64,000 bases of DNA. Source: Haliotis cracherodii (lineage: Eukaryota). The translations under genes and the position numbers were made by a program. Positions 3,671 through 59,390 of this stretch are shown in pieces (within the stretch, counting starts at the first letter, position 1; every line of letters starts with the position of its first letter). Under the pieces are notes generated by a model that saw only the letters and a program-made list of their open reading frames with translations, was not told where the DNA came from and did no database searches. The stretch is from positions 372,001-436,000 of the forward strand of contig NW_027266343.1 of assembly GCF_022045235.1 (NCBI RefSeq). Reading direction: 5' to 3'.

Positions 3671-3676
3671 TATATA

Positions 3677-10015: not shown

Positions 10016-10022
10016 GAATTTG

Positions 10023-12345: not shown

Positions 12346-12413
12346 GGCTGGGCTAGAGTTCCCACTGACATTTAATGAAGGGCATAAGCCCTGGTTGATG
12401 ACAAGATTACTAA

Positions 12414-20815: not shown

Positions 20816-22403
20816 GCCGGGAATTGTTGGCAGTGCATGGAGAAGGGAGATAGATGACTGGTTAGGCTCTGGGGGAATTCAAGTTAGAAGTAGTCCACAC
20901 TGACCTGTGACTCTTGGAGAGGTGACTACATTCATTTGGTGAAATGGTGGTTTTCGAGTCATCATACTCAGATGTTGTTGGGAAGGGACGGTAGTGGGGA
21001 AGGAAGAGGATGGGAGTAGGGAAGGACGGTAGTCGGGATAGGAGATGATGGGAGTTGGGAAGGTAGAAGATGATGAGGGAGGGAGGGGATGGTAATAGGG
21101 AAGGGAGCGTTTGGAATAGACTGGGTGGTAGTGGGGAAGGGAGAGGTTGGGAGTGGTGGAATGGAGAGTGGGGAAGGGACAAGATGTCATTGGGGGAGAA
21201 GAGAATAATAATGGGGAATGGAGAGAATGGTAATGGGGAATTTAAAGGATGGTAGTGGGGAAGGGAGAGGTTTGTAGTGGGGAAGGGATAGTGGAATGGA
21301 GAGGGGGATACTGGGGAAGGGAGATGATTGGAGTGGGGAAGGTGAGAGAATGGGAGTGGGGAAGGTGAGAGGATTGGAGTGGGGAATGGAGAGGATGAGA
21401 GTGGGGAAGGTGCGGAAGGGAAAGGATGGGAGTGGGGAAGAGAGAGTATACGAGTGGAGAAGGGAGATGATGAGAGTGGGGAAGAGAGAGGATGGGAGTG
21501 GGGAAGGGAGAGGATGTTTATTGGGAAGGGATATGATGGTAGTGGGGAAGGTGAGATAATGGGAGTGGGGAATGGAGAGGATGACAGTAGGGAAGGGAAA
21601 GGATGGGAGTAGGGAAGGGAGAGAACGGGAGTGAGAAGGGAGCTGAACGGAGTAAAGATGGTATTGGGGAAGGGGACGATGGGAGTGGGGAAGGGAGATG
21701 ATGGGAGTAGAGAAGGGAGAAGATGCCAGTGAGGAAGGGAGAGGATGGTAGTGGGGAAGAGAAAACATGTTTATTGGGAAGGGACGTGATGGTAGTGGGG
21801 AAGGGAGAGGGTGTGGGGAGTGGGGAATGGAGAGAATGGGAGTGGGGAAGTGAGAGGATAGGAGTAGGGAAAGTGAGAGGATGCCAGTGGGGAATGGAGA
21901 GGGTGGTAGTGGGGAAGGTGAGAGGATTGGAGTGGGGAAGGGAGAAGATGAGAGAGGGGAAGAGAAAGGATGGGAGTGGAGAAGGGAGATGATGGTAATG
22001 GGGAAGGGAGGGAAAGGTATTTGGGAAGGGGAGGGTGGGAGTGGGGAAGGGAGGTGATGGGAGTAGAGAAGGGAGAGGATGGGATTGGGGAAGGGAGATG
22101 ATGGTAATGGGGAAGGGAGAGAAAGGTATTTGGGAAGGGGAGGGTGGGAGTGGGGAAGGGAGGTGAAGGTAGTGGGGAAGGGAGAGCATGGGAGTGGAGG
22201 AGGGAGATGATGTGGGGAAAATGGGGAAAGATGCCAGTGGGGAAGGGAGAGGTTGGTTGTGAGGAATGGAGAGTGGAAGGGAGAGGGGAACAGACAGGAT
22301 GTTTATTGGGAAGGGACATGATGGTAGTGAGGAAGGGAGAGGATGGTAGTGAGGAAGGGAGAGGATGGGAGTGGGAAAGGGAGAGGATGGAATTGGGGAA
22401 GGG

Positions 22404-22960
22404 AATTGAACTCGGCGACAACCACAACGGGGCGCGCTGACTTGGTTTGGTACAGCCGGCCTCCGTTGGGAGCGCCAAGTCGGGAGCACCCGGCGCCGAC
22501 CAGGCTTGGGAGCACTGGGTCCGACCGAGACGGGAGCACCCGTCAGCGGCCAGAACGGGACGCGCCAACTTGGCTTGGGTGCGCCGGCTTCCGACGGGAG
22601 CGCCAAGTCGGGAGCACCCGGCGCCGATAAGAAAGGGACTCGCCGACTTGGCTTGGGTGCGCCGAGTCCGCCCGACACGGGAACACCCGGCCCCGCCCAA
22701 AACGGGAATCGCCCACTTGGCTTGGGAGCGTCGGGTCCCGAGACGGGAGCTCCCGGCGGCAACCAGAACCGGACGCGCCGACTTGGCTTGGGTGTGCCAG
22801 CCACCGACGGGAGCGCCAAGTCGGGAGCACCCGGCGCCGATAAGAAAGGGACGCGCCGACTTGGGTCGGGGCCACTCCCGTGGAGACGACAGAGACAAGG
22901 CGAAATGCCCGTCACGCTTTGAACATCCTCGGAGAACATACCCCGGGGGTCGGGTTCACT
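22404..22960. repeat. CpG-rich island 1 (type A; mixed 69/78-bp subrepeats)
   Basis: Starts AATTGAACTCGGCGACAACCAC, ends GGGGTCGGGTTCACT; GACTTGG/CCAAGTC subrepeats. Confidence 0.9.
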
Positions 22961-24109
22961 GGGGTGGGGAATGGAGAGGATGAGAGCGGGCAAGAGAGAT
23001 GATTGGAGTGGGGAAGGTGAGAGAGTGGGAGTGGGGAAGGGAGAGGTTGGTTGTGGGGAAGGTGAGAGGATGGGAGTGGGGAAGGGTGAGGATGGGAGTG
23101 GGGAAGGTGAGAGGATGGGAGCAGGTGAAGGTGAGAGAATTGGAGTGGAAAAGGGAGACAATGGGAATCGGGAAGGGAGAGGATGGTATTGGGAAATGTC
23201 AGAGGATGGGAGCATGGAAGGTGAGAGGATAGGAGTGGGGAATGGAGAAGATGAGGGTACGAAGGGAGCTGATGGGATTGGGGAAGGGAGATGATGGTAA
23301 TGGGGAAGGGAGGGAAAGGTATTTGGGAAGGGGAAGATGGGAGTGGGGAAGGGATATGATTGGAGTAGAGAAGGGAGGGGATTGTAATGGGGAAGGGAGA
23401 TGAAGGTAGTGGGGAAGGGAGAGAATGGAAGTGGGGAATGGAAAGGATGACAGTAGGGAAGGGAAAGGATGGGAGTAGGGAAGGGAGAAAACGGGAGTGA
23501 GAAGGGAGCTGAACGGAGTAAAGATGGTAATGGGGAAGGGAGAGGAAGGTATTGGGGAAGGGGACGATGGGAGTTGGGAAGGGATATGATGGGAGTAGAG
23601 AAGGGAGAAGATGCCAGTGAGGAAGGGAGAGGGTGGTAGTGAGGAATGGAGAGGGTGGTAGTGGGGAAGAGACAACATGTTTATTGGGAAGGGACATGAT
23701 GGGAGTGGGGAAGGGATATGATGGGAGTAGAGAAGGGAGAGGATGGGATTGGGGAAGGGAGATGATGGTAATGGGGAAGGGAGGGAAAGGTATTTTGGAA
23801 GGGGAGGGTGGGAGTGGGGAAGGGATATGATGGGAGTAGAGAAGGGAGAGGATGGTAATGGGGAAGGGAGGTGAAGGTAGTGGGGAAGGGAGAGAATGGG
23901 AGTGGAGAAGGGAGATGATGTGGGGAAAATGGGGAAAGATGCCAGTGGGGAAGGGAGAGGGTGGTAGTGAGGAATGGAGAGGGAGGTAGAGGGGAACAGA
24001 CAGGATGTTTATTGGGAAGGGACATGATGGTAGTGAGGAAGGCAGAGGATGGTAGTGAGGAAGGGAGAGGATGGGAGTGGGAAAGGGAGAAGATGGGATT
24101 GGGGAAGGG

Positions 24110-24637
24110 AATTGAACTCGGCGACAACCACAACGGGACGCGCTGACTCGGTTTGGTACAGCCGGCCTCCGACGGGAGCGCCAAGTCGGGAGCACCCGGC
24201 GCCGATAAGAAAGGGACTAGCCGACTTGGCTTGGGAGCGCCGGCCTCCGACGTGAGCGCCAAGTCGGGAGCACCGGGCGCCGATAAGAACCGGACGCGCC
24301 GACTTGGCTTGGGTGCGCCGGCCTCCGACGGGAGCGCCAAGTCGGGAGCACCCGGCGCCGATAAGAACCGGACGCGCCGACTTGGCTTGGGTGCGCCGGC
24401 CTCCGACGGGAGCGCCAAGTCGGGAGCACCGGGCGCCGATAAGAACCGGACGCGCCGACTTGGCTTGGGTGCGCCGGCCTCCGACGGGAGCGCCAAGTCG
24501 GGAGCACCCGGCGCCGATAAGAACGGGACGCGCCGACTTGGGTCGGGGTCACTCCCGTGGAGACGACAGAGACAAGGCGAAATGCCCGTCACGCTTTGAA
24601 CATCCTCGGAGAACATACCCCGGGGGTCGGGTTCACT
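24110..24637. repeat. CpG-rich island 2 (type A; five near-identical 78-bp subrepeats)
   Basis: 78-bp period, e.g. GACTTGG at 24301 and 24379. Confidence 0.9.
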
Positions 24638-25646
24638 AGGGTGGGGAATGGAGAGGATGAGAGCGGGCAAGAGAGATGATTGGAGTGGGGAAGGTGAGAG
24701 AGTGGGAGTGGGGAAGGGAGAGGTTGGTTGTGGGGAAGGGGAGAGGATGGGAGTGGGGAAGGGTGAGGATGGGAGTGGGGAAGGTGAGAGGATGGGAGCA
24801 GGTGAAGGTGAGAGAATTGGAGTGGAAAAGGGAGACAATTGGAATCGGGAAGAGAGAGGATGGTAGTGGGGAAGGGACAGAATGGGAGTAGGGAAGGGAG
24901 AGGGTGGGAGTGCAGAACGGACAGGATGGGAGTGGGGAAGAGAGAGGACGGGAGCGGAGAAGGGAGATGATGGGAGTAAAGAAGGGAGAAGATGCCAGTG
25001 GGGAAGGGAGAGGGTGGTAGTTGGGAAGGTGAGAGAATCGGAGTGGAGAAAGGAGAAGTTGAGAGTGGGGAAGAGAGAGGATGAGAATGGGGAAGGGACA
25101 GGATATTTATTGGGAAGGGATATGATGGTAGTGGGGAAGGGAGAGGATGGTAGTTGGAAAAGGAGAGGATGTGAGTAGGGAAGGGAGAGGATGGGAGTGG
25201 GGAATGGAGAGCATGAGAGTGGGGAAGGGAGAGGATGAGAATGGGGAAGGGACAGGATATTTATTGGGAAGGGATATGATGGTAGTGGGGAAGGGAGAGG
25301 ATGGTAGTTGGAAAAGGAGAGGATGTGAGTAGGGAAGGGAGAGGATGGGAGTGGGGAATGGAGAGCATGAGAGTGGGGAAGGGAGAGGATGGGAATGGGG
25401 AAGGGAGGTGAAGGTAGTGGGGAAGGGAGAGAATGGGAGTGGAGAAGGGAGATGATGTGGGGAAAATGGGGAAAGATGCCAGTGGGGAAGGGAGAGGGTG
25501 GTAGTGAGGAATGGAGAGGGAGGTAGAGGGGAACAGACAGGATGTTTATTGGGAAGGGACATGATGGTAGTGAGGAAGGCAGAGGATGGTAGTGAGGAAG
25601 GGAGAGGATGGGAGTGGGAAAGGGAGAGGATGGGATTGGGGAAGGG

Positions 25647-26096
25647 AATTGAACTCGGGGACAACCACAACGGGACGCGCTGACTCGGTTTGGTACAGCC
25701 GGCCTCCGACGGGAGCGCCAAGTCGGGAGCACCGGGCGCCGAAAAGAACCGGACGCGCCGACTTGGCTTGGGTGCGCCGGCCTCCGACGGGAGCGCCAAG
25801 TCGGGAGCACCCGGCGCCGATAAGAACGGGACGCGCCGACTTGGCTTGGGTGCGCCGGCCTCCGACGGGAGCGCCAAGTCGGGAGCACCCGGCGCCGATA
25901 AGAACCGGACGCGCCGACTTGGCTTGGGTGCGCCGGCCTCCGACGGGAGCGCCAAGTCGGGAGCACCCGGCGCCGATAAGAACGGGACGCGCCGACTTGG
26001 GTCGGGGTCACTCCCGTGGAGACGACAGAGACAAGGTGAAATGCCCGTCACGCTTTGAACATCCTCGGAGAACATACCCCGGGGGTCGGGTTCACT
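25647..26096. repeat. CpG-rich island 3 (type A; four 78-bp subrepeats)
   Basis: Same ends as island 2, 78 bp shorter. Confidence 0.9.
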
Positions 26097-29000
26097 GGGG
26101 TGGGGAATGGAGAGGATGAGAGCGGGCAAGAGAGATGATTGGAGTGGGGAAGGTGAGAGAGTGGGAGTGGGGAAGGGAGAGGTTGGTTGTGGGGAAGGTG
26201 AGAGGATGGGAGTGGGGAAGGGTGAGGATGGGAGTGGGGAAGGTGAGAGGATGGGAGCAGGTGAAGGTGAGAGAATTGGAGTGGAAAAGGGAGACAATGG
26301 GAATCGGGAAGGGAGAGGATGGTATTGGGAAATGTCAGAGGATGGGAGCATGGAAGGTGAGAGGATAGGAGTGGGGAATGGAGAAGATGAGGGTACGAAG
26401 GGAGCTGATGGGATTGGGGAAGGGAGATGATGGTAATGGGGAAGGGAGGGAAAGGTATTTGGGAAGGGGAAGATGGGAGTGGGGAAGGGATATGATTGGA
26501 GTAGAGAAGGGAGGGGATTGTAATGGGGAAGGGAGATGAAGGTAGTGGGGAAGGGAGAGAATGGAAGTGGGGAATGGAGAGGATGACAGTAGGGAAGGGA
26601 AAGGATGGGAGTAGGGAAGGGAGAAAACGGGAGTGAGAAGGGAGCTGAACGGAGTAAAGATGGTAATGGGGAAGGGAGGGGATTGTAATGGGGAAGGGAG
26701 ATGAAGGTAGTGGGGAAGGGAGAGAATGGGAGTGGAGAAGGGAGATGATGTGGGGAAAATGGGGAAAGATGCCAGTGGGGAAGGGAGAGGGTGATAGTGA
26801 GGAATGGAGAGGGAGGTAGAGGAGAAAAGAGAAGATGTTTATTGGGAAGGGACATGATGGTAGTGGGGAAGGGAGAGGATGGTAGTGGAAAAGGGAGAGG
26901 ATGTGAGTCGGGAAGGAAGAGGATGGGAGTGGAGAAGGGAGAGGATGGGAGTGGGGAATGGAGAGGATGAGAGTGGGGAAGGGAGAGGATGGGAATGGGG
27001 AAGAGAGAGGATGGGATTTGGGAAGGGAGGGGATGAGAGTAGGGAAGGTGAGAGGATGGTAGCGGGGAAGGGTGAGTGGGAATTGGAGTGGAAAAGGGAG
27101 ACAATTGGAATCGGGAAGGGAGAGGATGGTAGTGGGGAAGGGACAGAATGGGAGTAGGGAAGGGAGAGGGTGGGAGTGCAGAACGGACAGGATGGGAGTG
27201 GGGAAGAGAGAGGACGGGAGTGGAGAAGGGAGATGATGGGAGTAGAGAAGGGAGAAGATGCCAGTGGGGAAGGGAGAGGGTGGTAGTGGGGAAGGTGAGA
27301 GGATCGGAGTTGAGAAAGGAGAAGTTGAGAGTGGGGAAGAGAGAGGATGAGAATGGGGAAGGGACAGGATATTTATTGGGAAGGGATATGATGGTAGTGG
27401 GGAAGGGAGAGGATGGTAGTTGGAAAAGGAGAGGATGTGAGTAGGGAAGGGAGAGGATGGGAGTGGGGAATCGAGAGCATGAGAGTGGGGAAGGGAGAGG
27501 ATGGGAATGGGGAAGGGAGAGAATGGGAGTGCAGAAGGGACAGGATGGGAGTGGGGAAGAGAGAGCATGGGAGTGGGGAAGGGAGATGATGGGAGAAGAG
27601 AAGGGAGAAGATGCCAGTGGTAGTGAAGAAGGGAGATGATGGTAGCGGGGAAGAGAGAGGGTAGGATTAGAGAAGGGAGAGGATGGTTATGGGGAAGGGA
27701 GATGAAGGTAGTGGGGAAGGGAGAGCATGGGAGTGGAGAAGGGAGATGATGTGGTGAAAAGGGAGAATATGCCATTGGGGAAGGGAGAGGGCGGTAGTGG
27801 GGAACGGAGTGGGTGGTGTAGGGGAACAGACAGGATGTTTATTGGGCAGGGACATGATGGTAGTGGGGAAGGGAGAGACAGGTGGCAGAGAAGGGAGAGG
27901 ATGGCAGTAGGGAAGGGAAAAGATAGGAGTAGGGAAGGGAGAGAACGGGAGTGAGAAGGGAGCTGAACGGAGTAAAGATGGTAATGGGGAAGGGAGAGGA
28001 AGGTATTGGGGAAGGGGAGGATGGGAGTGGGGAAGGGAGATGATGGGAGTAGAGAAGGGAAAAGACGCCAGTGAGGAAGGGAGAGGGTGGTAGTGGGGAA
28101 TGGAGAGGGTGGTAGTGGGGAAGAGACAACATGTTTATTGGGAAGGGACATGATGGTAGTGGGGAAGGGAGAGGGTTTGGGGAGTGGGGAATGGAGAAAA
28201 TGGGAGTGGGGAATGGAGAGGGTTGTAGTGTGGAAGGTGAGAGGATGGGAGTTGGGAAGGGAGAAGATGAGAGTGGGGAAGAGAGAGGTTGGGAGTGGAG
28301 AAGGGAGATGATGGTAGTGGGGAAGGGAGAGGATAGGAGTAGACAAGGGAGAAGATGCCAGTGGGGAATGGAGAGGGTGGTAGTTGGGAAGGTGAGAGGA
28401 TGGGAGTGGGGAAGGGAGAGGATGGGAGTGGGGAAGGGAGATGATTGGAGTGGGGAAGGGAGATGATGGGAGCAGAGAAGGGAAAGGATGGTTATAGGGG
28501 AAGGGAGAGGGTGCTAGTGAGGAATGGAGAGGGTGGTAGTGGGGAAGAGACAGCATGTTTATTGGGAAGGGACATGATAGTAGTGAGGAAGGGAGAGGAT
28601 GGTAGTGGGGAGGGGAGAGGATGTAAGTAGGGAAGGGAGAGGATGGGAGTGGGGAAGGGAGAGGATGGAAGTGGGGAAGAGAGAGACTGGGAGTGGGGAA
28701 GGGAGAGGATGAGAGTGGGGAAGGTGAGAGAATGGGAGTGGGGAATGGAGAGGATGACAGTAGGGAAGGGAAAGGATGGGAGTAAGGAAGGGAGAGAACG
28801 GGAGTGAGAAGGGAGCTGAACGGAGTAAAGATGGTAATGGGGAAGGGAGAGGAAGGTATTGGGGAAGGGGAGGATGGGAGTGGGGAAGGGAGATGATGGA
28901 AATAGAGAAGGGAGAAGATGGCAGTTGGGAAGGGAGAGGGTGGTAGTGAGGAATGGAGAGGGAGGTAGAGGGGAACAGACAAGATGTTTATTGGGAAGGG

Positions 29001-31251
29001 ACATGATGGTAGTGCGGAAGGGAGAGGATGGTAGTGAGGAAGAGAGAGGATGGGAGTGGGGAAGGGAGAGAACGGGAGTGAGAAGGGAGCTGAACAGAGT
29101 AAAGACGGTAATGGGGAAGGGAGAGGAAGGTATTGGGGAAGGGGAGGATGGGAGTGGGAAGGGAGAGGATGGGAGTAGAGAAGGGAGAAGATGGCAGTTG
29201 GGAAGGGAGAGGGTGGTAGTGAGGAATGGAGAGGGAGGTAGAGGGGAACAGACAGGATGTGGAAGGTGAGAGAATGGGAGTGGGGAATGGAGGGGATGGG
29301 AGTGGGGAAGGGAGAGGATGGGAGTGGGGAAGGTGAGAGGATGGGAGCGGTGAAGAGAGAAGCTGGGATTAGGGAAGGGAGAGGATGGGAGTAGGGAAGG
29401 GAGAGGATGGGAGTGGGGAAGGGAGAAGATGGGAGTAGGGAAGGGAGATGATTGGAGTGGGGAAGGTAAGAGAATCGGAGTGGGGAAGGTGAGAGGATGG
29501 GAGCGGGGAATGGAGAGGATGAGAGTGGGAAAGGGAGAGGATGGGAGTAGGGAAGGGAGATGGTGGGATTGGGGAAGGGAGATGATGGTATAAAGAGGAT
29601 GGTAGTGGGGAAGAGACACGATGTTTATTGGGAAGGGACATGATGGTATTGGGGAAGGGAGAGGATGGTAATTGGGAAGGGAGAGGATGTGCATGGGGAA
29701 GGGAGAGGATGGGAGTGGGGAAGGGAAAGAATTGGAGTAGGGAAGGGAGAGGATGGGAGTGCGGAAGGGACAGGATGGGAGTGGGGAAGAGAGAGGATGG
29801 GAGTGGAGAAGAGAGATGATGGGAGTAGAGAAGGGAGAAGACGCCAGTGGAGAAGGGAGAGGGTGCTAGTGAGGAATAGAGAGGGTGGTAGTGGGGAAAA
29901 GACAGCATGTTTACTGGGAAGGGACATGATAGTAGTGCAGAAGGGACAGGGTGGGAGTGGGGAAGAGAGAGGATGGGAGTGGAGAAGGGAGATGATGGGA
30001 GTAGAGAAGGGAGAGGGTGGTAGTGGGGAAGAGACAGCATGTTTATTGGGAAGGGACATGATAGTAAGGGAGAGGGTGTGGGGATTGGGGAATAGAGAGA
30101 ATGTAGAGAAGGGAGATGATGGGAGTAGAGAAGGGAGAAGATGCCCGTCGGGAATGGAGAGGGTGGTAGTGGGGAAAGGAGAGGATGAAAGAGGGGAAGG
30201 GAGAGGATGGGAGTGGGGAAGGATGAGAGTGGGGAAGGTGAGTGAATGGTAGTGTGGAAAGGAGAGGATGAGAGTAGGGAAGGGAAAGGATGGGAGTGAG
30301 AAGGGAGCTGGACGGAGTAAAGATGGTAATGGGGAAGGGAGAGGAAGGTATTGGGGAAGGGGACGATAGGAGTGGGGAAGGGAGATGATGGTAGTTGGAA
30401 ATGGAGAGGGTGGTAGTGGGGAAAAGTCAGCATGTTTATTGGGAAGGGACATGATAGTAGTGCGGAAGGGACAGGGTGGGAGTGGGGAAGAGAGAGTATG
30501 GGAGTGGAGAAGGGAGATGATGGGAGTAGAGAAGGGAGAGGGTGGTAGTGGGGAAGAGACAACATGTTTATTGGGAAGGGACATGATGGTAGTGGGGAAG
30601 GGAGAGGGTGTGGGGAGTGGGGAATGGAGAGAATGGGAGTGGGGAAGTGAGAGGATGGGAGTAGGGAAGGTGATAGGATGCCAGTCGGGAATGGAAAGGG
30701 TGGTTGTGGGGAAGGTGAGAGGATGGGATTGGGGAAGGGTGAGGATGGGAGTGGGGAAGAGAAAGGATGGGAGTGGAGAAGGAGTGGAGTGGAGATGATG
30801 GTAATGGGGAAGGGAGGGAAAGGTATTTGGGAAGGGGAGGATGGGAGTGGGGAAGGGATATGATGGGAGTAGAGAAGGGAGAGGATGGGATTGGGGAAGG
30901 GAGATGATGGTAATGGGGAAGGGAGGGAAAGGTATTTGGGAAGGGGAGGGTGGGAGTGGGGAAGGGATATGATGGGAGTAGAGAAGGGAGAGGATGGTAA
31001 TGGGGAAGGGAGGTGAAGGTAGTGGGGAAGGGAGAGAATGGGAGTGGAGAAGGGAGATGATGTGGGGAAAATGGGGAAAGATGCCAGTGGGGAAGGGAGA
31101 GGGTGGTAGTGAGGAATGGAGAGGGAGGTAGAGGGGAACAGACAGGATGTTTATTGGGAAGGGACATGATGGTAGTGAGGAAGGCAGAGGATGGTAGTGA
31201 GGAAGGGAGAGGATGGGAGTGGGAAAGGGAGAGGATGGGATTGTGGAAGGG

Positions 31252-31442
31252 AATTGAACTCGGCGACAACCACAACGGGACGCGCTGACTTGGTTTGGTA
31301 CAGCTGGCCTCCGACGGGAGCGCCAAGTCGGCACTCGCCGACTTGGGTCGGGGTCACTCCCGGGGAGACGACAGAGACAAGGCGAAATGCCCGTCACGTT
31401 TTGAACATCCTTGGAGAAAATACCCCCGGGGTCGGGTTCACT
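31252..31442. repeat. CpG-rich island 4 (type A, collapsed to one partial subrepeat)
   Basis: Same ends; internal CCAAGTCGGCACTCGCCGACTTGG hairpin. Confidence 0.88.
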
Positions 31443-33638: not shown

Positions 33639-33829
33639 AATTGAACTCGGCGACAACCACAACGGGACGCGCTGACTTGGTTTGGTACAGCTGGCCTCCG
33701 ACGGGAGCGCCAAGTCGGCACTCGCCGACTTGGGTCGGGGTCACTCCCGGGGAGACGACAGAGACAAGGCGAAATGCCCGTCACGCTTTGAACATCCTCG
33801 GAGAAAATACCCCCGGGGTCGGGTTCACT
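33639..33829. repeat. CpG-rich island 5 (copy of island 4, offset 2387 bp)
   Basis: Near-identical to 31252-31442. Confidence 0.88.
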
Positions 33830-42800: not shown

Positions 42801-44423
42801 GAAAAATGATGTTTATTGGGAAGGGATATGATGGTAGTGGGGAAGGGAGAGGATGGTAGTGGGGAAGGGAGAGGATGTCAGTAGGGAACGGAGAGGATGG
42901 AGAGCATGAGAGCTGGGAAGGGAGAGGATGGGAATGCGGAAGGAAGAGGATGGGAGTGGGGAAGGTGAGAGGATGGTAGCGGGGAAGGGAAGGGATGGGA
43001 GTGGGGAAGGTGAGAGGATGGGAAAGAAAGGGGAAGAGAGAGGCTGGGATTTGGGAAGGGAGAGGTTGGGAGTCTGGAAGGTGAGAGGATGGTAACAGGG
43101 AAGGTGAGAGGATGGGAGTGGGGAAGGTGAGAGGATGGGAGCGGGTGAAGGTGAGAAAATTGGTGTGTAAAAGGGAGACAATGGGAAAGGGTAAGGGAGA
43201 GGATGGGAGTGGGGAAGGGAGAGGATGGGAGTAGGGAAGGGAGATGAAGGGATTTGGGAGAGAAGGGAAGGTATTTGGGAAGGGCATCATCGGAGTGGGG
43301 AAGGGAGATGATGGGAGTAGAGAAGGGAGAGGATCGTAATGGGGAAGGGAGATGAAGGTTGTGGGGAAGGGAGAGGATGGGAGCGGGGAAGGTAGAAGAT
43401 GCCAGTGGGGAAGGGAGAGGGTGGTAGTGTGGAATGGAGAGGGTGGTAGTGGGGAAGGTGAGAGGATGAGAGTGGGGAAGGGAGAAGGTGAGAGTGGGGA
43501 AGAGAGAGGATGGGAGTGGAGAAGGGAGATGATGTAGTGGGGAAGGGAGAGGATGGGAGTGGGGAAGGGAGAGGATGAAAGTGGGGAAGAGAGAGGATGG
43601 GAGTGGGGAAGGGAGAGGATGAGAGTGGAGAACGTGAGAGAATGGGAGTGGGGAATGGAGAGGATGACAGTAGGGAAGGGAAAGGATGGGAGTAGGGAAG
43701 GGAAAGGATGGGAGTAGGGAAGGGAGAGAACGGGAGTGAGAAGGGAGCTGAACGGAGTAAAGATGGTAATGGGGAAGGGAGAGAAAGGTATTGGGAAGGG
43801 GACGATGGGAGTGGGGAAGGGAGATGATGGGATTGGGGAAGGGAGATGATGGTAATGGGGAAGAAAGGGGAAGGTATTTGGGAAGGGCATCCTCGGAGTG
43901 GGGAAGGTGAGAGGATGGGAGCATGGAAGGTGAGAGGATGGGAGTGGGGAAGGTGAGAGGATGGGATCGGTTGAAGGTGAGAGAATTGGAGTGGAAAAGG
44001 GAGACAATGGGAATGAGGAAAGGAGAGGATGGTAGTGGGAAATTTGAGAGGATGGGAGCATGGAAGGTGAGAGGATGGGAGTAGGGAAGGGAGATGATGG
44101 GATTGGGGAAGGGAGATGATGGTTAAGTTGGAAGGGAGGGGAAGGTATTTGGGAAGGGCTTCCTCGGAGTGGGGAAGGGAGATGATGGGAGTAGAGAAGG
44201 GAGAGGATGGTAATGGGGAAGGGAGATGAAAGTGTTGGGGAATGGAGAGGATAGGTGTGGGGAAGGTGAGAGAATGGCAGTGGGGAAGGGAGAGGATGGG
44301 AGTGGGGAAGGCGAGAGGATGGTAGTGGTGAAGGGAGAGGATGGTAGTGAAGAAAAGAGAGGATGGTAGTGAGGAAGGGAGAGGATGGGAGTGGGAAAGG
44401 GAGAGGATAAGATTGGGGAAGGG

Positions 44424-44760
44424 AATTGAACTCGGCGACAACCACAACGGGACGCGCTGACTTGGTTTGATACAGCCGGCCTCTGTCGGGAGCGCCAAGT
44501 CGGGAGCACCCGGCGCCGATAAGAAAGGTACTCGCCGACTTGGCTTGGAAGCGCACGACGCAATACGGAGGAGAGTAAGTGAGTCACTTACATTTAAAGG
44601 TCGCATCGATATCAAAGGCAGGGCCTGTCACACTTTGAACATGCTTGGTGAACATACCCCTGGAGTCGGGGTCAATCCGGGGGGAGACGGCAGGGGCAAG
44701 GCGAAAGGCCAATCACACTTTAAACATGCTCGGGGAACATACCCCGGGGATCGGGGTCAA
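44424..44760. repeat. CpG-rich island 6 (type B; AT-richer core plus ~85-bp subrepeats)
   Basis: Same left end; core GAGTAAGTGAGTCACTTACATTTAAAGGTCGCATCGATATCAAAGG. Confidence 0.88.
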
Positions 44761-47700
44761 TGGGGTGGGGAATGGAGAGGATGAGAGTGGGGAAGGGAGA
44801 TGATTGGAGTGGGGAAGGTGAGAGAATTGTAGTGGGGAAGGGAGAGGATGGTTGTAGAAAAGATGAGAGGATGGGAGTGGGGAATGGAGAGGGTGGTAGT
44901 GGGGAAGGGAGAGGATGAAAGTGGGGAAGAAAGAGGATGGGAGTGGGGAAGGGAGAGGATGAGAGTGGAGAACGTGAGAGAATGGTAGTGGGGAATAGAG
45001 AGGATGACAGTAGGGAAGGAAAAAGGATGGGAGTAGGGAAGGGAGAAAACGGGAGTGAGAAGGGAGCTGAACGGAGTAAAGATGGTAATGGGGAAGGGAG
45101 AGGAAGGTATTGGGGAAGGGGACGATGGGAGTGGGGAAGGGAGAGGATGGGAGCGGGGAAGGGTGAGGATGGGAGCATGGAAGGTGAGAGGATGGGAGCG
45201 GGTGAAGGTGGGAGAATTGGTGCGGAAAGGGAGACAATTGGAATCGGGAAGGGAGAGGATGGTAGTGGGAAATGTGAGGATGGGAGCATGGAAGGTGAGA
45301 GGATGGGAGTGGGGAATGGAGAGGATGGGAGTTGGGAGGGAGAAAATGGGAGTGGGGACGGGAAAAAGATAGAAATGGGGAAGGTGAGAGGATGGGAGTG
45401 GTGAAGAGAGAAGATGGGAGTGGGGAAGGTGAGAGGATGGGAAAGGGGAAGAGAGAGGCTGGGATTTGGGAAGGGAGAGGATGGGAGTGGGAAATGTGAG
45501 AGGATGGGAGAATGGTAGGTGAGAGGATGGGGGTGGGAAATGTGAAAGGATGGGAGCATGGAAGGTGAGAGGATGGGAGTGGGGAATTGAGAGGATGGGA
45601 GTAGAGAAGGGAGAGGATGGTAATGGGGAAGGGAGATGAAAGTGATGGGGAATGGAGAGGATGGGTGTGGGGAAGGTGAGAGAATGGCAGTGGGCAAGGG
45701 ATAGGATGGGAGTGGGGAAGGCGAGTGGATGGTAGTGGTGAAGGGAGAGGATGGTAGTGAAGAAAAGAGAGGATGGTAGTGAGGAAGGGAGAGGATGGGA
45801 GTGGGAAATGGAGAGGATGGGATTGGTGAAGGGAATTGAACTCGGCGACAACCACAACGGGACGCGCTGACTTTGGTTTGATACAGCCGGCCTCCGTCGG
45901 GAGCGCCAAGTCGGGAGCGCCAAGTCGGGAGCGCCAAGTCGGGAGCACCCGGCGCCGATAAGAAAGGTACTCGCCGACTTGGCTTGGGAGCGCCGGGTCA
46001 GCCCGAGACGGGGTCACCCGTCGGCGACCAGAACGGTAGGCGCCGAGTGGGCTTGGGAGCGCCGGGTCCGCCCGACACGGGAACACCCGGCGCCGACCAG
46101 AACGGGAATCGCCGACTTGGCTTGGTAGCGCACGACGCAATACGGAGGAGAGTAAGTGAGTCACTCACATATTAAGGTCGCATCGATATCAAAGGCAGGG
46201 CCTGTCACACTTTGAACATGCTCGGTGAACATAACCCTGGAGTCGGGGTCAATCCGGGGGGGAGACGGCAGGGGCAAGGCGAAAGGCCAATCACACTTTA
46301 AACATGCTCGGGGAACATACCCCGGGGATCGGGGTCAATGGGGTGGGGAATGGAGAGGATGAGAGTGGGGAAGGGAGATGATTGGAGTGGGGAAGGTGAG
46401 AGAATTGTAGTGGGGAAGGGAGAGGATGGTTGTAGAAAAGGTGAGAGGATGGGAGTGGGGAATGGAGAGGGTGGTAGTGGGGAAGGGAGAGGATGAAAGT
46501 GGGGAAGAGAGAGGATGGGAGTGGGGAAGGGAGAGGATGAGAGTGGAGAACGTGAGAGAATGGTAGTGGGGAATAGAGAGGATGACAGTAGGGAAGGAAA
46601 AAGGATGGGAGTAGGGAAGGGAGAAAATGGGAGTGAGAAGGGAGCTGAACGGAGTAAAGATGGTAATGGGGAAGGGAGAGGAAGGTATTGGGGAAGGGGA
46701 CGATGGGAGTGGGGAAGGGAGAGGATGGGAGCGGGGAAGGGTGAGGATGGGAGCATGGAAGGTGAGAGGATGGGAGCGGGTGAAGGTGGGAGAATTGGTG
46801 CGGAAAGGGAGACAATTGGAATCGGGAAGGGAGAGGATGGTAGTGGGAAATGTGAGGATGGGAGCATGGAAGGTGAGAGGATGGGAGTGGGGAATGGAGA
46901 GGATGGGAGTTGGGAAGGGAGAAAATGGGAGTGGGGACGGGAAAAAGATAGAAATGGGGAAGGTGAGAGGATGGGAGTGGTGAAGAGAGAAGATGGGAGT
47001 GGGGAAGGTGAGAGGATGGGAAAGGGGAAGAGAGAGGCTGGGATTTGGGAAGGGAGAGGATGGGAGTGGGAAATGTGAGAGGATGGGAGAATGGTAGGTG
47101 AGAGGATGGGGGTGGGAAATGTGAAAGGATGGGAGCATGGAAGGTGAGAGGATGGGAGTGGGGAATTGAGAGGATGGGAGTAGAGAAGGGAGAGGATGGT
47201 AATGGGGAAGGGAGATGAAAGTGATGGGGAATGGAGAGGATGGGTGTGGGGAAGGTGAGAGAATGGCAGTGGGCAAGGGATAGGATGGGAGTGGGGAAGG
47301 CGAGTGGATGGTAGTGGTGAAGGGAGAGGATGGTAGTGAAGAAAAGAGAGGATGGTAGTGAGGAAGGGAGAGGATGGGAGTGGGAAATGGAGAGGATGGG
47401 ATTGGTGAAGGGAATTGAACTCGGCGACAACCACAACGGGACGCGCTGACTTTGGTTTGATACAGCCAGCCTCCGTCGGGAGCGCCAAGTCGGGAGCGCC
47501 AAGTCGGGAGCGCCAAGTCGGGAGCACCCGGCGCCGATAAGAAAGGTACTCGCCGACTTGGCTTGGGAGCGCCGGGTCAGCCCGAGACGGGGTCAACCGT
47601 CGGCGACCAGAACGGTAGGCGCCGAGTGGGCTTGGGAGCGCCGGGTCCGCCCGACACGGGAACACCCGGCGCCGACCAGAACGGGAATAGCCGACTTGGC

Positions 47701-50700
47701 TTGGTAGCGCACGACGCAATACGGAGGAGAGTAAGTGAGTCACTCACATATTAAGGTCGCATCGATATCAAAGGCAGGGCCTGTCACACTTTGAACATGC
47801 TCGGTGAACATACCCCTGGAGTCGGGGTCAATCCGGGGGGAGACGGCAGGGGCAAGGCGAAAGGCCAATCACACTTTAAACATGCTCGGGGAACATACCC
47901 CGGGGATCGGGGTCAATGGGGTGGGGAATGGAGAGGATGAGAGTGGGGAAGGGAGATGATTGGAGTGGGGAAGGTGAGAGAATGGGAGTGGGGAAGGGAG
48001 AGGATGGTTGTAGAAAAGGTGAGAGGATGGGAGTGGGGAATGGAGAGGGTGGTAGTGGGGAAGGGAGAGGATGAAAGTGGGGAAGAGAGAGGATGGGAGT
48101 GGGGAAGGGAGAGGATGAGAGTGGAGAACGTGAGAGAATGGTAGTGGGGAATAGAGAGGATGACAGTAGGGAAGGAAAAAGGATGGGAGTAGGGAAGGGA
48201 GAAAACGGGAGTGAGAAGGGAGCTGAACGGAGTAAAGATGGTAATGGGGAAGGGAGAGGAAGGTATTGGGGAAGGGGACGATGGGAGTGGGGAAGGGAGA
48301 GGATGGGAGCGGGGAAGGGTGAGGATGGGAGCATGGAAGGTGAGAGGATGGGAGCGGGTGAAGGTGGGAGAATTGGTGCGGAAAGGGAGACAATTGGAAT
48401 CGGGAAGGGAGAGGATGGTAGTGGGAAATGTGAGGATGGGAGCATGGAAGGTGAGAGGATGGGAGTGGGGAATGGAGAGGATGGGAGTTGGGAAGGGAGA
48501 AAATGGGAGTGGGGACGGGAAAAAGATAGAAATGGGGAAGGTGAGAGGATGGGAGTGGTGAAGAGAGAAGATGGGAGTGGGGAAGGTGAGAGGATGGGAA
48601 AGGGGAAGAGAGAGGCTGGGATTTGGGAAGGGAGAGGATGGGAGTGGGAAATGTGAGAGGATGGGAGAATGGTAGGTGAGAGGATAGGGGTGGGAAATGT
48701 GAAAGGATGGGAGCATGGAAGGTGAGAGGATGGGAGTGGGGAATTGAGAGGATGGGAGTAGAGAAGGGAGAGGATGGTAATGGGGAAGGGAGATGAAAGT
48801 GATGGGGAATGGAGAGGATGGGTGTGGGGAAGGTGAGAGAATGGCAGTGGGCAAGGGATAGGATGGGAGTGGGGAAGGCGAGTGGATGGTAGTGGTGAAG
48901 GGAGAGGATGGTAGTGAAGAAAAGAGAGGATGGTAGTGAGGAAGGGAGAGGATGGGAGTGGGAAATGGAGAGGATGGGATTGGTGAAGGGAATTGAACTC
49001 GGCGACAACCACAACGGGACGCGCTGACTTTGGTTTGATACAGCCAGCCTCCGTCGGGAGCGCCAAGTCGGGAGCGCCAAGTCGGGAGCGCCAAGTCGGG
49101 AGCACCCGGCGCCGATAAGAAAGGTACTCGCCGACTTGGCTTGGGAGCGCCGGGTCAGCCCGAGACGGGGTCAACCGTCGGCGACCAGAACGGTAGGCGC
49201 CGAGTGGGCTTGGGAGCGCCGGGTCCGCCCGACACGGGAACACCCGGCGCCGACCAGAACGGGAATCGCCGACTTGGCTTGGTAGCGCACGACGCAATAC
49301 GGAGGAGAGTAAGTGAGTCACTCACATATTAAGGTCGCATCGATATCAAAGGCAGGGCCTGTCAAACTTTGAACATGCTCGGTGAACATACCCCTGGAGT
49401 CGGGGTCAATCCGGGGGGAGACGGCAGGGGCAAGGCGAAAGGCCAATCACACTTTAAACATGCTCGGGGAACATACCCCGGGGATCGGGGTCAATGGGGT
49501 GGGGAATGGAGAGGATGAGAGTGGGGAAGGGAGATGATTGGAGTGGGGAAGGTGAGAGAATGGGAGTGGGGAAGGGAGAGGATGGTTGTAGAAAAGGTGA
49601 GAGGATGGGAGTGGGGAATGGAGAGGGTGGTAGTGGGGAAGGGAGAGGATGAAAGTGGGGAAGAGAGAGGATGGGAGTGGGGAAGGGAGAGGATGAGAGT
49701 GGAGAACGTGAGAGAATGGTAGTGGGGAATAGAGAGGATGACAGTAGGGAAGGAAAAAGGATGGGAGTAGGGAAGGGAGAAAACGGGAGTGAGAAGGGAG
49801 CTGAACGGAGTAAAGATGGTAATGGGGAAGGGAGAGGAAGGTATTGGGGAAGGGGACGATGGGAGTGGGGAAGGGAGAGGATGGGAGCGGGGAAGGGTGA
49901 GGATGGGAGCATGGAAGGTGAGAGGATGGGAGCGGGTGAAGGTGGGAGAATTGGTGCGGAAAGGGAGACAATTGGAATCGGGAAGGGAGAGGATGGTAGT
50001 GGGAAATGTGAGGATGGGAGCATGGAAGGTGAGAGGATGGGAGTGGGGAATGGAGAGGATGGGAGTTGGGAAGGGAGAAAATGGGAGTGGGGACGGGAAA
50101 AAGATAGAAATGGGGAAGGTGAGAGGATGGGAGTGGTGAAGAGAGAAGATGGGAGTGGGGAAGGTGAGAGGATGGGAAAGGGGAAGAGAGAGGCTGGGAT
50201 TTGGGAAGGGAGAGGATGGGAGTGGGAAATGTGAGAGGATGGGAGAATGGTAGGTGAGAGGATGGGGGTGGGAAATGTGAAAGGATGGGAGCATGGAAGG
50301 TGAGAGGATGGGAGTGGGGAATTGAGAGGATGGGAGTAGAGAAGGGAGAGGATGGTAATGGGGAAGGGAGATGAAAGTGATGGGGAATGGATAGGATGGG
50401 TGTGGGGAAGGTGAGAGAATGGCAGTGGGGAAGGGATAGGATGGGAGTGGGGAAGGCGAGTGGATGGTAGTGGTGAAGGGAGAGGATGGTAGTGAAGAAA
50501 AGAGAGGATGGTAGTGAGGAAGGGAGAGGATGGGAGTGGGAAATGGAGAGGATGGGATTGGTGAAGGGAATTGAACTCGGCGACAACCACAACGGGACGC
50601 GCTGACTTTGGTTTGATACAGCCGGCCTCCGTCGGGAGCGCCAAGTCGGGGGCGCCAAGTCGGGAGCGCCAAGTCGGGAGCACCCGGCGCCGATAAGAAA

Positions 50701-51820
50701 GGTACTCGCCGACTTGGCTTGGGAGCGCCGGGTCAGCCCGAGACGGGGTCACCCGTCGGCGACCAGAACGGTAGGCGCCGAGTGGGCTTGGGAGCGCCGG
50801 GTCCGCCCGACACGGGAACACCCGGCGCCGACCAGAACGGGAATCGCCGACTTGGCTTGGTAGCGCACGACGCAATACGGAGGAGAGTAAGTGAGTCACT
50901 CACATATTAAGGTCGCATCGATATCAAAGGCAGGGCCTGTCACACTTTGAACATGCTCGGTGAACATACCCCTGGAGTCGGGGTCAATCCGGGGGGAGAC
51001 GGCAGGGGCAAGGCGAAAGGCCAATCACACTTTAAACATGCTCGGGGAACATACCCCGGGGATCGGGGTCAATGGGGTGGGGAATGGAGAGGATGAGAGT
51101 GGGGAAGGGAGATGATTGGAGTGGGGAAGGTGAGAGAATGGGAGTGGGGAAGGGAGAGGATGGTTGTAGAAAAGGTGAGAGGATGGTTGTAGAAAAGGTG
51201 AGAGGGTGGTAGTGGGGAAGGGAGAGGATGAAAGTGGGGAAGAGAGAGGATGGGAGTGGGGAAGGGAGAGGATGGGAGTGGGGAAGGGAGAGGATGAGAG
51301 TGGAGAACGTGAGAGAATGGTAGTGGGGAATAGAGAGGATGACAGTAGGGAAGGAAAAAGGATGGGAGTAGGGAAGGGAGAAAACGGGAGTGAGAAGGGA
51401 GCTGAACGGAGTAAAGATGGTAATGGGGAAGGGAGAGGAAGGTATTGGGGAAGGGGACGATGGGAGTGGGGAAGGGAGAGGATGGGAGCGGGGAAGGGTG
51501 AGGATGGGAGCATGGAAGGTGAGAGGATGGGAGCGGGTGAAGGTGGGAGAATTGGTGCGGAAAGGGAGACAATTGGAATCGGGAAGGGAGAGGATGGTAG
51601 TGGGAAATGTGAGGATGGGAGCATGGAAGGTGAGAGGATGGGAGTGGGGAATGGAGAGGATGGGAGTTGGGAAGGGAGAAAATGGGAGTGGGGACGGGAA
51701 AGAGATAGAAATGGGGAAGGTGAGAGGATGGGAGTGGTGAAGAGAGAAGATGGGAGTGGGGAAGGTGAGACGATGGGAAAGGGGAAGAGAGAGGCTGGGA
51801 TTTGGGAAGGGAGAGGATGG
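44540..51820. repeat. 1578-bp higher-order tandem repeat, ~4.6 near-identical copies, carrying type B islands at 45834-46338, 47413-47916, 48991-49494 and 50569-51072
   Basis: ORF-track ends recur at 44713, 46291, 47869, 49447 and 51025. Confidence 0.93.

Positions 51821-59346: not shown

Positions 59347-59390
<44 letters not shown>
59347..59390 (+). repeat. (GT)22 microsatellite
   Basis: Directly visible. Confidence 0.98.

What the first reader, a model, noticed from the sequence alone, without database searches (positions are those of the whole stretch)
22404..51072. Ten co-oriented CpG-rich cassettes in a G-rich satellite, built like an rDNA spacer/promoter fragment
Seen: ten GC/CpG-rich islands of 190-560 bp sit in an otherwise CpG-poor purine satellite. 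All share orientation, the left junction (GAAGGG|AATTGAACTCGG) and the right junction (GTCGGG..CA.T|GGGGTGGGGAATGGAGAGGATGAGAG). The fullest form (type B) is 69/78-bp GACTTGG subrepeats, a ~75-bp unique AT-richer core, then ~85-bp subrepeats. Known: GC-rich, copy-number-variable subrepeats around a short initiator are typical of 45S rDNA intergenic spacers, and GACTTGC is the Xenopus Pol I terminator box. Inference: one captured spacer/ETS (or other promoter-monomer) fragment was amplified with the satellite, giving a satellite punctuated by possible promoter/enhancer cassettes that could drive satellite transcription or nucleolar association. Shared junctions and no visible TSDs argue against ten independent insertions.
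Basis: partly seen in the sequence, partly recalled or inferred. Interest (0 to 1): 0.8.

Follow-up and report, generated by a model that had tools for sequence, protein, structure and literature searches.

The report
Ribosomal spacer fragments inside a satellite
Ten copies of a half-kilobase piece of ribosomal-DNA spacer sit inside a long purine-rich satellite near a chromosome end; they look like one old captured fragment multiplied along with the satellite, a known kind of event with no sign yet of a job of its own.

Summary
Ten co-oriented, CpG-rich cassettes of 193-559 bp lie in a 37-kb array of a 22-bp purine satellite, all with the same left and right junctions.

The cassettes match, collinearly and at 78-82% identity, a stretch between 28S and 18S. 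The donor is not the main rDNA. It is a second, divergent rDNA type on C11 and C13 whose 9.2-kb spacer carries an antisense 5S gene. The cassette corresponds to the stretch that starts about 30 bp upstream of that 5S gene: GACTTGG subrepeats, a unique core, then the first 83-bp subrepeats.

The promoter reading is not supported:
- The only promoter-like block shared by both rDNA types lies about 3 kb downstream of the cassette segment and is absent from the cassettes.
- The core resembles it no more than chance allows.
- 5 of 10 cassettes lack the core.
- One probable RNA run of the same species put no contig on the cassette.

Independent DNA of the same species and of a relative carries the junctions.

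Best reading: one old capture, multiplied by unequal crossing-over. This is a new member of a known kind (spacer-derived repeats). In passing, the genome has two complete, divergent rRNA gene sets.

The parts
21161..58070 (+). Host satellite: about 37 kb of a 22-bp purine-rich unit (GTGGGGAAGGGAGAGGATGGGA), with the G-rich strand on +
   Evidence: Tandem Repeats Finder rows of period 22/44/66. GC skew is about +0.9. C is 1.6% of bases in 52001-58000.
22404..22962 (+). Cassette c1 (group A, 559 bp): mixed 69/78-bp GACTTGG subrepeats, no core, one terminal 83-bp-type unit
   Evidence: Junction motifs, motif map, blastn to the spacer at 78.7% over 465 bp.
24110..24639 (+). Cassette c2 (group A, 530 bp): 78-bp subrepeats x5.3, no core
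   Evidence: 87% identity over 212 bp to the C11 spacer.
25647..26098 (+). Cassette c3 (group A, 452 bp): 78-bp subrepeats x4.3, no core
31252..31444 (+). Cassette c4 (group A, short form, 193 bp): left unit plus terminal 83-bp-type unit
   Evidence: 88.9% over 99 bp to the C11 spacer.
33639..33831 (+). Cassette c5 (group A, short form, 193 bp), 2387 bp after c4
   Evidence: 90.9% over 99 bp to the C11 spacer.
44424..44763 (+). Cassette c6 (group B with an internal deletion, 340 bp): has the core
45834..46341 (+). Cassette c7 (group B, fullest form, 508 bp). Left unit and GACTTGG subrepeats run from 45834 to about 46125, the core is 46126-46203, and two units of about 87 bp run from about 46204 to 46341
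   Evidence: 78.8% over 448 bp to the C11 spacer and 77.8% over 424 bp to the C13 spacer.
47413..47919 (+). Cassette c8 (group B, 507 bp)
   Evidence: (99% to c7).
48991..49497 (+). Cassette c9 (group B, 507 bp)
50569..51075 (+). Cassette c10 (group B, 507 bp)
44764..51075 (+). Youngest higher-order repeat: four 1578-bp units (satellite plus cassette), running from the end of c6 to the end of c10
   Evidence: Right junctions are spaced 1578 bp four times. Flanks of c7-c10 are 96.8-100% identical.

Best explanation
The cassettes are copies of one fossil fragment, originally about 0.5 kb, of the intergenic spacer of the genome's second rDNA type, the one with a 5S gene in its spacer.

In that rDNA unit the order is: 28S, 3.75 kb of spacer, antisense 5S, GACTTGG subrepeats, unique core, about 29 subrepeats of 83 bp, promoter-like block, transcribed spacer, 18S. 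The captured piece starts about 30 bp upstream of the 5S gene and ends inside the 83-bp repeats.

The steps I infer:
1. The piece entered the 22-bp purine satellite, 0.4 Mb from the telomere of C80, once, before this species split from at least one relative. The likely route is double-strand-break repair or ectopic recombination with spacer DNA.
2. Unequal crossing-over in the satellite then copied blocks of 1.4-2.4 kb containing it.
3. Slippage and unequal exchange among its own subrepeats changed their number and deleted the core in half the copies.

I take the cassettes to have no promoter activity of their own. They keep the spacer's repeated CCGACTTGGC motif and its CpG content.

Shown: the homology, the collinearity, the shared junctions, the duplication pattern and the presence in other samples. 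Inferred: the capture mechanism and the lack of function.
For: Homology and position of the donor
- The search with 45834-46338 returns only the window's own cassettes on C80, plus C13:4557-7479, C11:20508688-20510676, one 226-bp island on C9 and one 77-bp piece on C11.
- 18S genes lie at C13:9822-11692 (+) and C11:20504171-20506041 (-). A 28S 3' end lies at C13:1-600 and an antisense 5S at C13:4357-4475.
- blastn of the whole window against these spacers and one main unit hits exactly the ten cassettes plus a (GT)n run, merging 587 alignments into 11 intervals.
- The alignment runs collinearly through the last GACTTGG units, the core and the first 83-bp units. Mean column identity is 81%, and the core is 68 of 78 identical.

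Single origin and amplification
- Both junctions are identical in 10 of 10 cassettes.
- The satellite flanks group the cassettes in mosaic fashion. For example, the right flanks of c1 and c3 are 100% identical, the left flanks of c2 and c4 are 99.2%, and c7-c10 are 96.8-100%.
- Spacings are 1578 bp x4 and 2387 bp.

Not an rDNA array in place
- No rRNA gene reaches threshold in the window or in the 10 kb on either side.
- No other spacer piece is present there.

Not an artefact, and old
- X3 contigs (same organism, another study) bridge the right junction: records 14 and 15.
- X8 (another organism label) bridges the left junction with 94 letters on one side and 39 on the other: record 18.

Not the promoter
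- A 38-bp block, AACTATCCA(A/G)CGTATCG...TAATGTG, is the only spacer stretch upstream of 18S conserved between the two rDNA types. It lies 1752 nt and 851 nt before 18S. Its score is 34 against shuffles of 16.5 +/- 2.2, with 0 of 500 reaching it.
- Core against that block: 118, 441, 16 and 448 of 500 shuffles reach the score.
- The core marker is present in only 5 of 10 cassettes.
Against: - Identity to today's spacers is only 78-82%, so the actual donor lineage is not in hand.
- Groups A (c1-c5) and B (c6-c10) agree 93-96% in the first 70 bp. In the terminal unit, right up to the shared junction, they agree only 78% (c4 against c7) to 83% (c1 against c7). The c1 terminal unit is 93.3% identical to a present-day spacer unit. 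A simple 'one capture, then neutral decay' model does not predict this. It calls for later conversion from rDNA or among subrepeats.
- The cassettes have not lost CpG. Observed/expected is 1.0-1.23. There are 34 shared CpGs, 6 cassette-only and 11 spacer-only, and only 2 of those 11 read TG or CA in the cassette. The unique flank stands at 0.54. That pattern would also fit protected, factor-bound DNA.
- The 11-mer GCCGACTTGGC is exact in 8 of 8 C13 subrepeats. In the window, 52 of 53 matches with up to 1 mismatch lie in cassettes, in both orientations. It looks like a binding site.
- The expression test is weak. It rests on contigs only, from one run guessed to be RNA.
- A target-site duplication cannot be judged. 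Both flanks show the TGGGGAAKGG part of the monomer, which fits either a 10-bp duplication or the loss of half a monomer.
Confidence: 0.8

Rival explanations
1. The cassettes are working spacer elements, in effect a natural pseudo-NOR. Arrays of the spacer's CCGACTTGGC motif stay unmethylated and bind the factor that binds the spacer of the 5S-linked rDNA. They then act as a terminator or fork-barrier-like element, an enhancer-like element or a spacer-promoter-like element, drawing this subtelomere to the nucleolus or driving satellite transcripts.
For: - CpG is undepleted next to a depleted flank.
- The motif is invariant in the spacer subrepeats and present 29 times forward and 28 times reversed in the cassettes.
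- The structure is kept in a related organism.
- The group A terminal unit stays close to current spacer units, as if sequence is still exchanged with rDNA.
Against: - The core has no similarity to the promoter-like block, and half the cassettes lack the core.
- The segment is absent from the main rDNA type, so it is not a general Pol I element.
- No RNA contig lies on the cassette in X22. Only 4 short, poorly matching satellite-like contigs were laid.
- The 78-bp unit does not fold better than shuffles: z = -1.63, and 11 of 200 shuffles fold at least as well.
- No Rfam family matches: the best hit is sR53 at E = 0.36.
Confidence: 0.12
2. The cassette belongs to a mobile element that entered both the rDNA spacer and the satellite independently.
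For: - Spacers are often built from transposon remnants (PMC10319768, abstract start in the search listing only).
- A small island of 2.9 GACTTGG-like 80-bp units on C9 abuts a 425-bp high-copy element.
Against: - The genome search with the cassette finds no dispersed family: only C80 (the window), C11, C13 and two small pieces.
- The 40 scored copies of the C9 neighbour element (2140 candidates) all begin after the GACTTGG units (query position 717 or later) and so do not include them.
- The cassettes have no terminal repeats and no reading frame.
- The cassette is a contiguous stretch of three different spacer repeat zones in spacer order.
Confidence: 0.04
3. The array is a decayed nucleolar organiser in place: an old rDNA array of the second type whose genes were lost while a spacer-born satellite expanded.
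For: - The position is subtelomeric: C80 starts with about 10 kb of (TAACCC)n and the window is 0.37-0.44 Mb in.
- The second-type rDNA copies lie at contig ends.
Against: - No 18S, 5.8S, 28S or 5S remnant lies in the window or in 10 kb on either side.
- No other spacer zone is present.
- All ten cassettes have the same two breakpoints against the satellite.
- The 22-bp satellite has no match in the spacer.
Confidence: 0.04

Closest known systems
Satellite repeats derived from the rDNA intergenic spacer (for example tomato, Jo et al. 2009, PMC2679016, abstract read; Physcomitrella IGS-related tandem repeat, PMC6302065, and As51 in characiform fishes, PMC13170303, abstract starts in search listings only)
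   Same: Spacer subrepeats are found outside the nucleolar organiser. They are multiplied by recombination or segmental duplication and shared among close relatives.
   Different: Here the spacer piece did not itself become the satellite. It is a passenger that punctuates an unrelated 22-bp satellite as part of higher-order units of 1.4-2.4 kb. The donor is a second, 5S-bearing rDNA type.
Xenopus spacer organisation: spacer promoters followed by 60/81-bp enhancer repeats, and the T3 terminator box (recalled, not checked in any call)
   Same: In the donor spacer, blocks of different subrepeats lie upstream of the gene promoter, with a short repeated motif resembling GACTTGC in 6 of 7 bases.
   Different: Spacer promoters and enhancer repeats in Xenopus copy parts of the gene promoter. 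Here the core shows no such similarity. No binding or transcription data exist, and the animal is a mollusc.
Pseudo-NORs: ectopic arrays of spacer enhancer repeats that bind UBF in human cells (recalled, not checked in any call)
   Same: Arrays of spacer repeats away from rRNA genes.
   Different: Those arrays are engineered and large and have proven UBF binding. Here there are ten small natural cassettes with no binding data.
NOR-5S: a 5S gene inserted antisense in the 45S spacer of turtles and crocodiles, expressed in oocytes (PMC8789306, abstract read), and of Nototheniidae (PMC10138776, abstract start in search listing only)
   Same: The donor rDNA unit has a 119-bp antisense 5S gene in its spacer. 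It is 87% identical to the canonical 5S array, close to the ~20% difference reported for turtles.
   Different: Here the 5S-bearing unit is a separate rDNA type whose 18S and 28S also differ by 6-7% from the main type. Its expression pattern is unknown. The cassettes do not include the 5S gene.

Membership tests
rDNA-spacer-derived dispersed or tandem repeat | Sequence homology to the host's own intergenic spacer | tested here: met
   78-82% identity over 399-448 bp, collinear, to the spacers on C13 and C11 that lie between 28S and 18S. There is no match to the main rDNA type.
rDNA-spacer-derived dispersed or tandem repeat | Located outside an rRNA gene array | tested here: met
   No Rfam rRNA match at gathering score in the window or in the 10 kb on either side. 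No other spacer or gene piece was found.
rDNA-spacer-derived dispersed or tandem repeat | Copy number raised by local duplication rather than transposition | tested here: met
   Junctions are identical in 10 of 10 cassettes. Spacings are 1578 bp x4 and 2387 bp, and flank identity reaches 100%.
Pol I spacer promoter / enhancer cassette | Copies part of the gene promoter | tested here: not met
   Core against the promoter-like block of either rDNA type: 118, 441, 16 and 448 of 500 shuffles reach the observed local score. The block itself is only a candidate promoter, picked out by its conservation between the two types.
Pol I spacer promoter / enhancer cassette | Transcripts start in the element | tested here: inconclusive
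   X22 (guessed RNA, same species, contigs only) has depth 0 from 45808 to 46428. Contigs cannot show starts, and low expression would be missed.
Pol I spacer promoter / enhancer cassette | Binding of Pol I factors (UBF, SL1) or of a terminator factor to the repeated motif | not testable with these tools
   Only motif conservation could be shown.
Transposable element insertion | Dispersed copies with the same ends | tested here: not met
   The genome search finds no such family. The high-copy element beside the C9 island does not include the GACTTGG units.
Transposable element insertion | Target-site duplication | tested here: inconclusive
   The flanks are periodic. TGGGGAAGGG on the left and TGGGGAATGG on the right could be a duplication or simply the satellite phase with half a monomer missing.
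CpG island (composition criteria: over 200 bp, GC over 0.5, CpG observed/expected over 0.6; the criteria are recalled) | Meets the composition thresholds | tested here: met
   8 of 10 cassettes meet them. c4 and c5 are 193 bp, so too short. GC is 0.57-0.68 and observed/expected is 1.00-1.23. Methylation state was not measured.

The most novel reading that the evidence does not exclude
The cassettes are a natural pseudo-NOR. Fifty-seven copies of the spacer motif CCGACTTGGC are kept free of CpG decay and occasionally re-copied from the rDNA by ectopic conversion. They bind the spacer factor of a second, 5S-linked rDNA system, which might be germline or oocyte specific as in turtles and zebrafish. 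In this way they tie a G-rich subtelomeric satellite to the nucleolus or mark it for Pol I-linked transcription.
Probability: 0.1. Interest if true: 0.7.

Novelty: new member of a known kind. Interest (0 to 1): 0.4.

Why it matters
Taken alone, this is a clean, datable example of how a piece of ribosomal spacer escapes the rDNA, lands in a satellite and is carried along by the satellite's own expansion. It also hints at later sequence exchange with the rDNA.

Its larger value is as a pointer. It led to a second rDNA family in this genome, with its own 18S, 5.8S, 28S and a spacer-borne 5S. That kind of dual ribosome-gene system is known from zebrafish (recalled) and, for the 5S part, from turtles (PMC8789306, abstract). 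If the second family turns out to be stage- or tissue-specific, the cassettes give a ready natural test of whether its spacer repeats can act away from rRNA genes.

Tried and rejected
Known RNA families. Rfam at gathering score over the whole window found nothing. At E <= 1 over 44300-46500 it found only sR53, 17.9 bits, E = 0.36. I rejected this line.

Hairpin or cruciform in the 78-bp unit, which carries the motif in both orientations. The DNA fold gave z = -1.63, and 11 of 200 shuffles fold at least as well. This is not evidence.

Core as a copy of the gene promoter. Rejected.

Core as markedly better conserved than its surroundings. The difference is only modest: 87.2% (68/78) against 81-82% overall.

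An empty site in the satellite that would show an insertion and a target duplication. None of the 11 other copies of the right-flank monomer variant is preceded by the left-flank monomer.

The 44-bp match at 59347-59390 to an rDNA unit. It is a (GT)n run that matches the main unit's microsatellite.

Relatives of the 22-bp satellite. Arrays 64-73% alike lie on many contigs. Since the cassette search returned nothing at those places, no cassette is known there.

Earlier scan notes near this place. There were none.

The Xenopus GACTTGC box. The paper search listed 10 papers, all with 0 occurrences of the word, so the analogy remains a recollection.

Paper searches for abalone rDNA variants or mollusc spacer-derived satellites listed no paper on either. 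The Haliotis rDNA papers by Guo et al. are cited in PMC6730533 but were not among the papers listed. I did not try to open them, so I did not see their sequences.

No supplementary file was asked for.

Full report
WHERE THE WINDOW LIES. The window is G000:C80:372001-436000. C80 is 60,096,789 bp and opens with about 10 kb of (TAACCC)n at 4-9973. The window is therefore 0.37-0.44 Mb from a telomere. Earlier AI notes of this scan call the genome black abalone. I did not verify that. The 18S lengths I found (1859 and 1871 nt) are within 1 nt of those tabulated for Haliotis species in PMC6730533 (1,858 and 1,871 nt; passages read). That is consistent with the label but is not proof.

THE OBSERVATION.
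- A 22-bp purine satellite runs from 21161 to 58070.
- Ten C-containing islands interrupt it.
- The left junction 18-mer occurs 10 times with no mismatch, all on the + strand, where shuffles expect 0.00.
- The right-flank 24-mer is exact at the ten cassette ends. It also occurs 11 more times with one mismatch elsewhere in the array, so the fragment sits in a recurrent monomer variant.
- Cassette lengths are 193-559 bp, GC is 0.57-0.68 and CpG observed/expected is 1.00-1.23. The unique flank 1-17000 has 0.54.
- The satellite is CpG-poor chiefly because it has 1.6% C; its own observed/expected is 0.90. The 'island' contrast is therefore mostly one of base composition.

WHAT IT IS.
Apart from the window's own cassettes, 45834-46338 matches C13:4557-7479 (+) and C11:20508688-20510676 (-), plus a 226-bp island on C9 and a 77-bp piece at C11:7036257.
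- 18S genes lie at C13:9822-11692 (+) and C11:20504171-20506041 (-).
- Rfam places a 28S 3' end at C13:1-600 and a 5S gene on the opposite strand at C13:4357-4475, with its counterpart on C11.
- With the tandem-repeat maps, the C13 spacer reads as follows:
  - 28S end at 600;
  - several repeat families up to about 4230;
  - antisense 5S at 4357-4475;
  - eight GACTTGG subrepeats of 54-78 bp at 4557-5072;
  - a unique core from 5075;
  - about 29 subrepeats of 83 bp at 5141-7556;
  - unique DNA at 7557-8358;
  - 53-bp repeats at 8359-9163;
  - 18S at 9822.
- blastn of the whole window against these spacers and one main rDNA unit hits the ten cassettes and nothing else except a (GT)n run.
- Group B cassettes align collinearly across the last GACTTGG units, the core and the first 83-bp units: 77.8-79.2% over 423-448 bp by blastn, and 81-82% by global alignment.
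- The left end of the cassette corresponds to a point about 30 bp upstream of the 5' end of the 5S gene. The alignment there is loose.
- The main rDNA type has no similarity to the cassettes. It has a 9.45-kb unit and was found on C10, C12, C23 and C75.

SINGLE ORIGIN, THEN AMPLIFICATION.
- All ten cassettes share both breakpoints and the adjoining satellite variants.
- Right junctions are spaced 1578 bp four times (c6 to c10), and c4 to c5 is 2387 bp.
- Flanking satellite identity is mosaic, as unequal crossing-over would produce. The right flanks of c1 and c3 are 100% identical, the left flanks of c2 and c4 are 99.2%, and c7-c10 are 96.8-100%.
- Inside the cassettes, subrepeat number varies: 78-bp units x5.3 in c2 and x4.3 in c3.
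- In c1-c5 the core is missing, with GACTTGG fused directly to the tail of an 83-bp unit.
- No rRNA gene or other spacer zone lies in the window or in 10 kb on either side. This is therefore not a decayed rDNA array.

INDEPENDENT SAMPLES (contigs only).
- X3 is DNA of the same organism label from another study. Its records 14 and 15 cross the right junction, with 243/31 and 41/62 letters on the two sides. Its records 11 and 12 match cassette B with 0 differences.
- X8 is DNA of another organism label. Its record 18 crosses the left junction with 94/39 letters and 15 differences. The junction therefore predates the split of these two organisms.
- X18 is guessed RNA of a third organism. It has contigs on the GACTTGG subrepeats only, and one contig that reaches just 14 letters past the left junction, which I do not count as bridging.
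- X22 is guessed RNA of the same species. It has four short contigs, all on satellite flanks at low likeness, and none on the cassette.
- X3 also holds a 185-nt contig of depth 1016 that matches the spacer version: it differs from the cassette at 18 places, and its loose end carries the spacer's extra 13 bp seen. Cassette-exact contigs have depth 38-40. Read loosely, since the tool warns that depth is no copy number, the donor spacer is present in roughly a hundred copies and is collapsed in the assembly.

HOW IT WORKS: THE PROMOTER IDEA.
- The two rDNA types are unalignable across almost all of the spacer.
- They share a 38-bp block, AACTATCCA(A/G)CGTATCG...TAATGTG, lying 1752 nt (second type) and 851 nt (main type) before 18S. 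Its local score is 34 against shuffles of 16.5 +/- 2.2, with 0 of 500 reaching it.
- That block is my candidate for the gene promoter or start site. This is an inference from conservation and nothing more. It lies about 3 kb downstream of the cassette segment and is not in the cassettes.
- The core resembles it no better than shuffled sequence does: 118, 441, 16 and 448 of 500 shuffles.
- The core is only modestly better kept than its surroundings: 87.2% against 81-82%.
- Five of ten cassettes lack the core.
- The cassette is therefore upstream-spacer material specific to the second rDNA type. It is not the initiator.

WHAT SPEAKS FOR SOME RETAINED ACTIVITY. I report this as fully as the rest.
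- The 11-mer GCCGACTTGGC is exact in 8 of 8 C13 subrepeats, where shuffles expect 0.18.
- In the window, 52 of 53 matches with up to 1 mismatch are in cassettes.
- Counting GACT[T/C]GG and its reverse, the cassettes hold 29 forward and 28 reverse copies, including a 14-bp triplet of reverse copies in group B.
- The cassettes show no CpG decay: 34 CpGs are shared with the spacer, 6 are cassette-only and 11 are spacer-only. Only 2 of those 11 read TG or CA in the cassette.
- The terminal 77-bp unit of group A is 93.3% identical to one current spacer unit (C11 unit at 4542). It is only 83.1% identical to the terminal unit of group B, although the satellite 24-mer right after the junction is identical in both groups. 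The comparison used 22 spacer units that a pattern picked out, not all of the roughly 48.
- The simplest account is gene conversion after capture, either from the rDNA spacer or among subrepeats, with the tract stopping where homology stops. I did not test this further.

MOBILE-ELEMENT RIVAL.
- The cassette has no dispersed family.
- The C9 island is 2.9 units of an 80-bp GACTTGG-like repeat.
- The 425-bp high-copy element beside it (2140 candidates, 40 scored) begins after the island in all scored copies.

VERDICT. The cassettes are a real feature, correctly read as a captured rDNA spacer fragment co-amplified with its host satellite. The kind is known: spacer-derived repeats outside the rDNA, for example in tomato (PMC2679016, abstract). 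The particulars are new: a passenger in another satellite's higher-order repeat, a donor that is a 5S-bearing second rDNA type, and possible later conversion. Promoter or enhancer function is unsupported but not excluded.

SIDE FINDING, PARTLY FOLLOWED.
- The genome has two full rRNA gene sets. Identity between them is 93.7% for 18S, 98.1% for 5.8S and 93.2% for 28S, and the internal transcribed spacers barely align.
- The differences cluster in a few 100-nt windows, while other windows have 0-3 changes.
- Rfam scores are nearly equal: 1719.6 against 1728.9 bits for 18S, and 3031 against 3063 for 28S. This points to two working types rather than a pseudogene.
- The spacer-borne 5S is 87% identical to the canonical 5S array on C23, which has a 3.0-kb period.
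- This recalls the antisense NOR-5S of turtles (PMC8789306, abstract) and the maternal and somatic rDNA of zebrafish (recalled).
- My paper searches listed no report of this for abalone. That is a statement about those three searches only.

Noticed in passing
L032+L042 (C13:1-18948), L044/L045 (end of C11) and L046 (C10:29299809-29309808): There are two divergent rDNA families in one genome. The main type has a 9.45-kb unit and an 18S of 1859 nt. The second type has an 18S of 1871 nt and a 9.2-kb spacer. Identity between them is 93.7% for 18S, 98.1% for 5.8S and 93.2% for 28S, and the internal transcribed spacers barely align. The differences cluster in a few windows, and Rfam scores are nearly equal, so both look functional. 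The two 18S lengths match the two lengths tabulated for different Haliotis species (PMC6730533).
   Followed up: partly
L032:4357-4475 (-) and L044:6409-6526 (+): A full-length 5S rRNA gene sits antisense in the spacer of the second rDNA type (Rfam 105 and 99 bits). It is 87% identical to the canonical 5S array at C23:50.93-51.14 Mb, which has a 3.0-kb period. The layout is the same as the NOR-5S of turtles and crocodiles (PMC8789306, abstract).
   Followed up: partly
L032:8070-8107 and L046:8597-8634: A 38-bp block is conserved between the otherwise unalignable spacers of the two rDNA types. It lies 1752 nt and 851 nt upstream of 18S and is a candidate Pol I promoter or start site. A second shared element of about 70 bp lies 450-800 bp after the 28S end, and is repeated 2.7 times in the second type.
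   Followed up: partly
L046:6970-7130 approximately (main-type spacer): The spacer of the main rDNA type contains a run of telomere-like CTAGGG/TTAGGG repeats. This was seen in the sequence printed.
   Followed up: no
Start of C2 (L052:5815-10000), C13:16269-18948 and C11:20496277-20499596: Three contig ends carry the second-type rDNA ending inward with the spacer cut at about the same point (spacer position 2679-2829). There are also paralogous spacer-like pieces about 0.2 Mb further in on all three. This looks like duplicated chromosome-end segments. Other spacer zones have dispersed copies on C3, C4, C12, C17, C36, C56 and C67.
   Followed up: no
window 18146-20816, 58152-59079 and 59546-61632: Three further satellites flank the 22-bp array: a 47-bp unit x57.7 (92% matches), a 103-bp unit x9 (92%), and a C-rich 61-bp unit on the opposite skew. 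The long 'ORFs' at 18032-20791 (-) are reading-frame artefacts of the 47-bp repeat.
   Followed up: no
window 4120-4443 (-): A remnant reading frame with a weak DDE_3 transposase match (E = 0.00078, 19.8 bits, below Pfam's cut-off of 28.6).
   Followed up: partly
L022:1729-2153 (C9:3384396-3384820): A short interspersed element of about 425 bp with over 2000 candidate copies at 90-93% identity across the genome.
   Followed up: no
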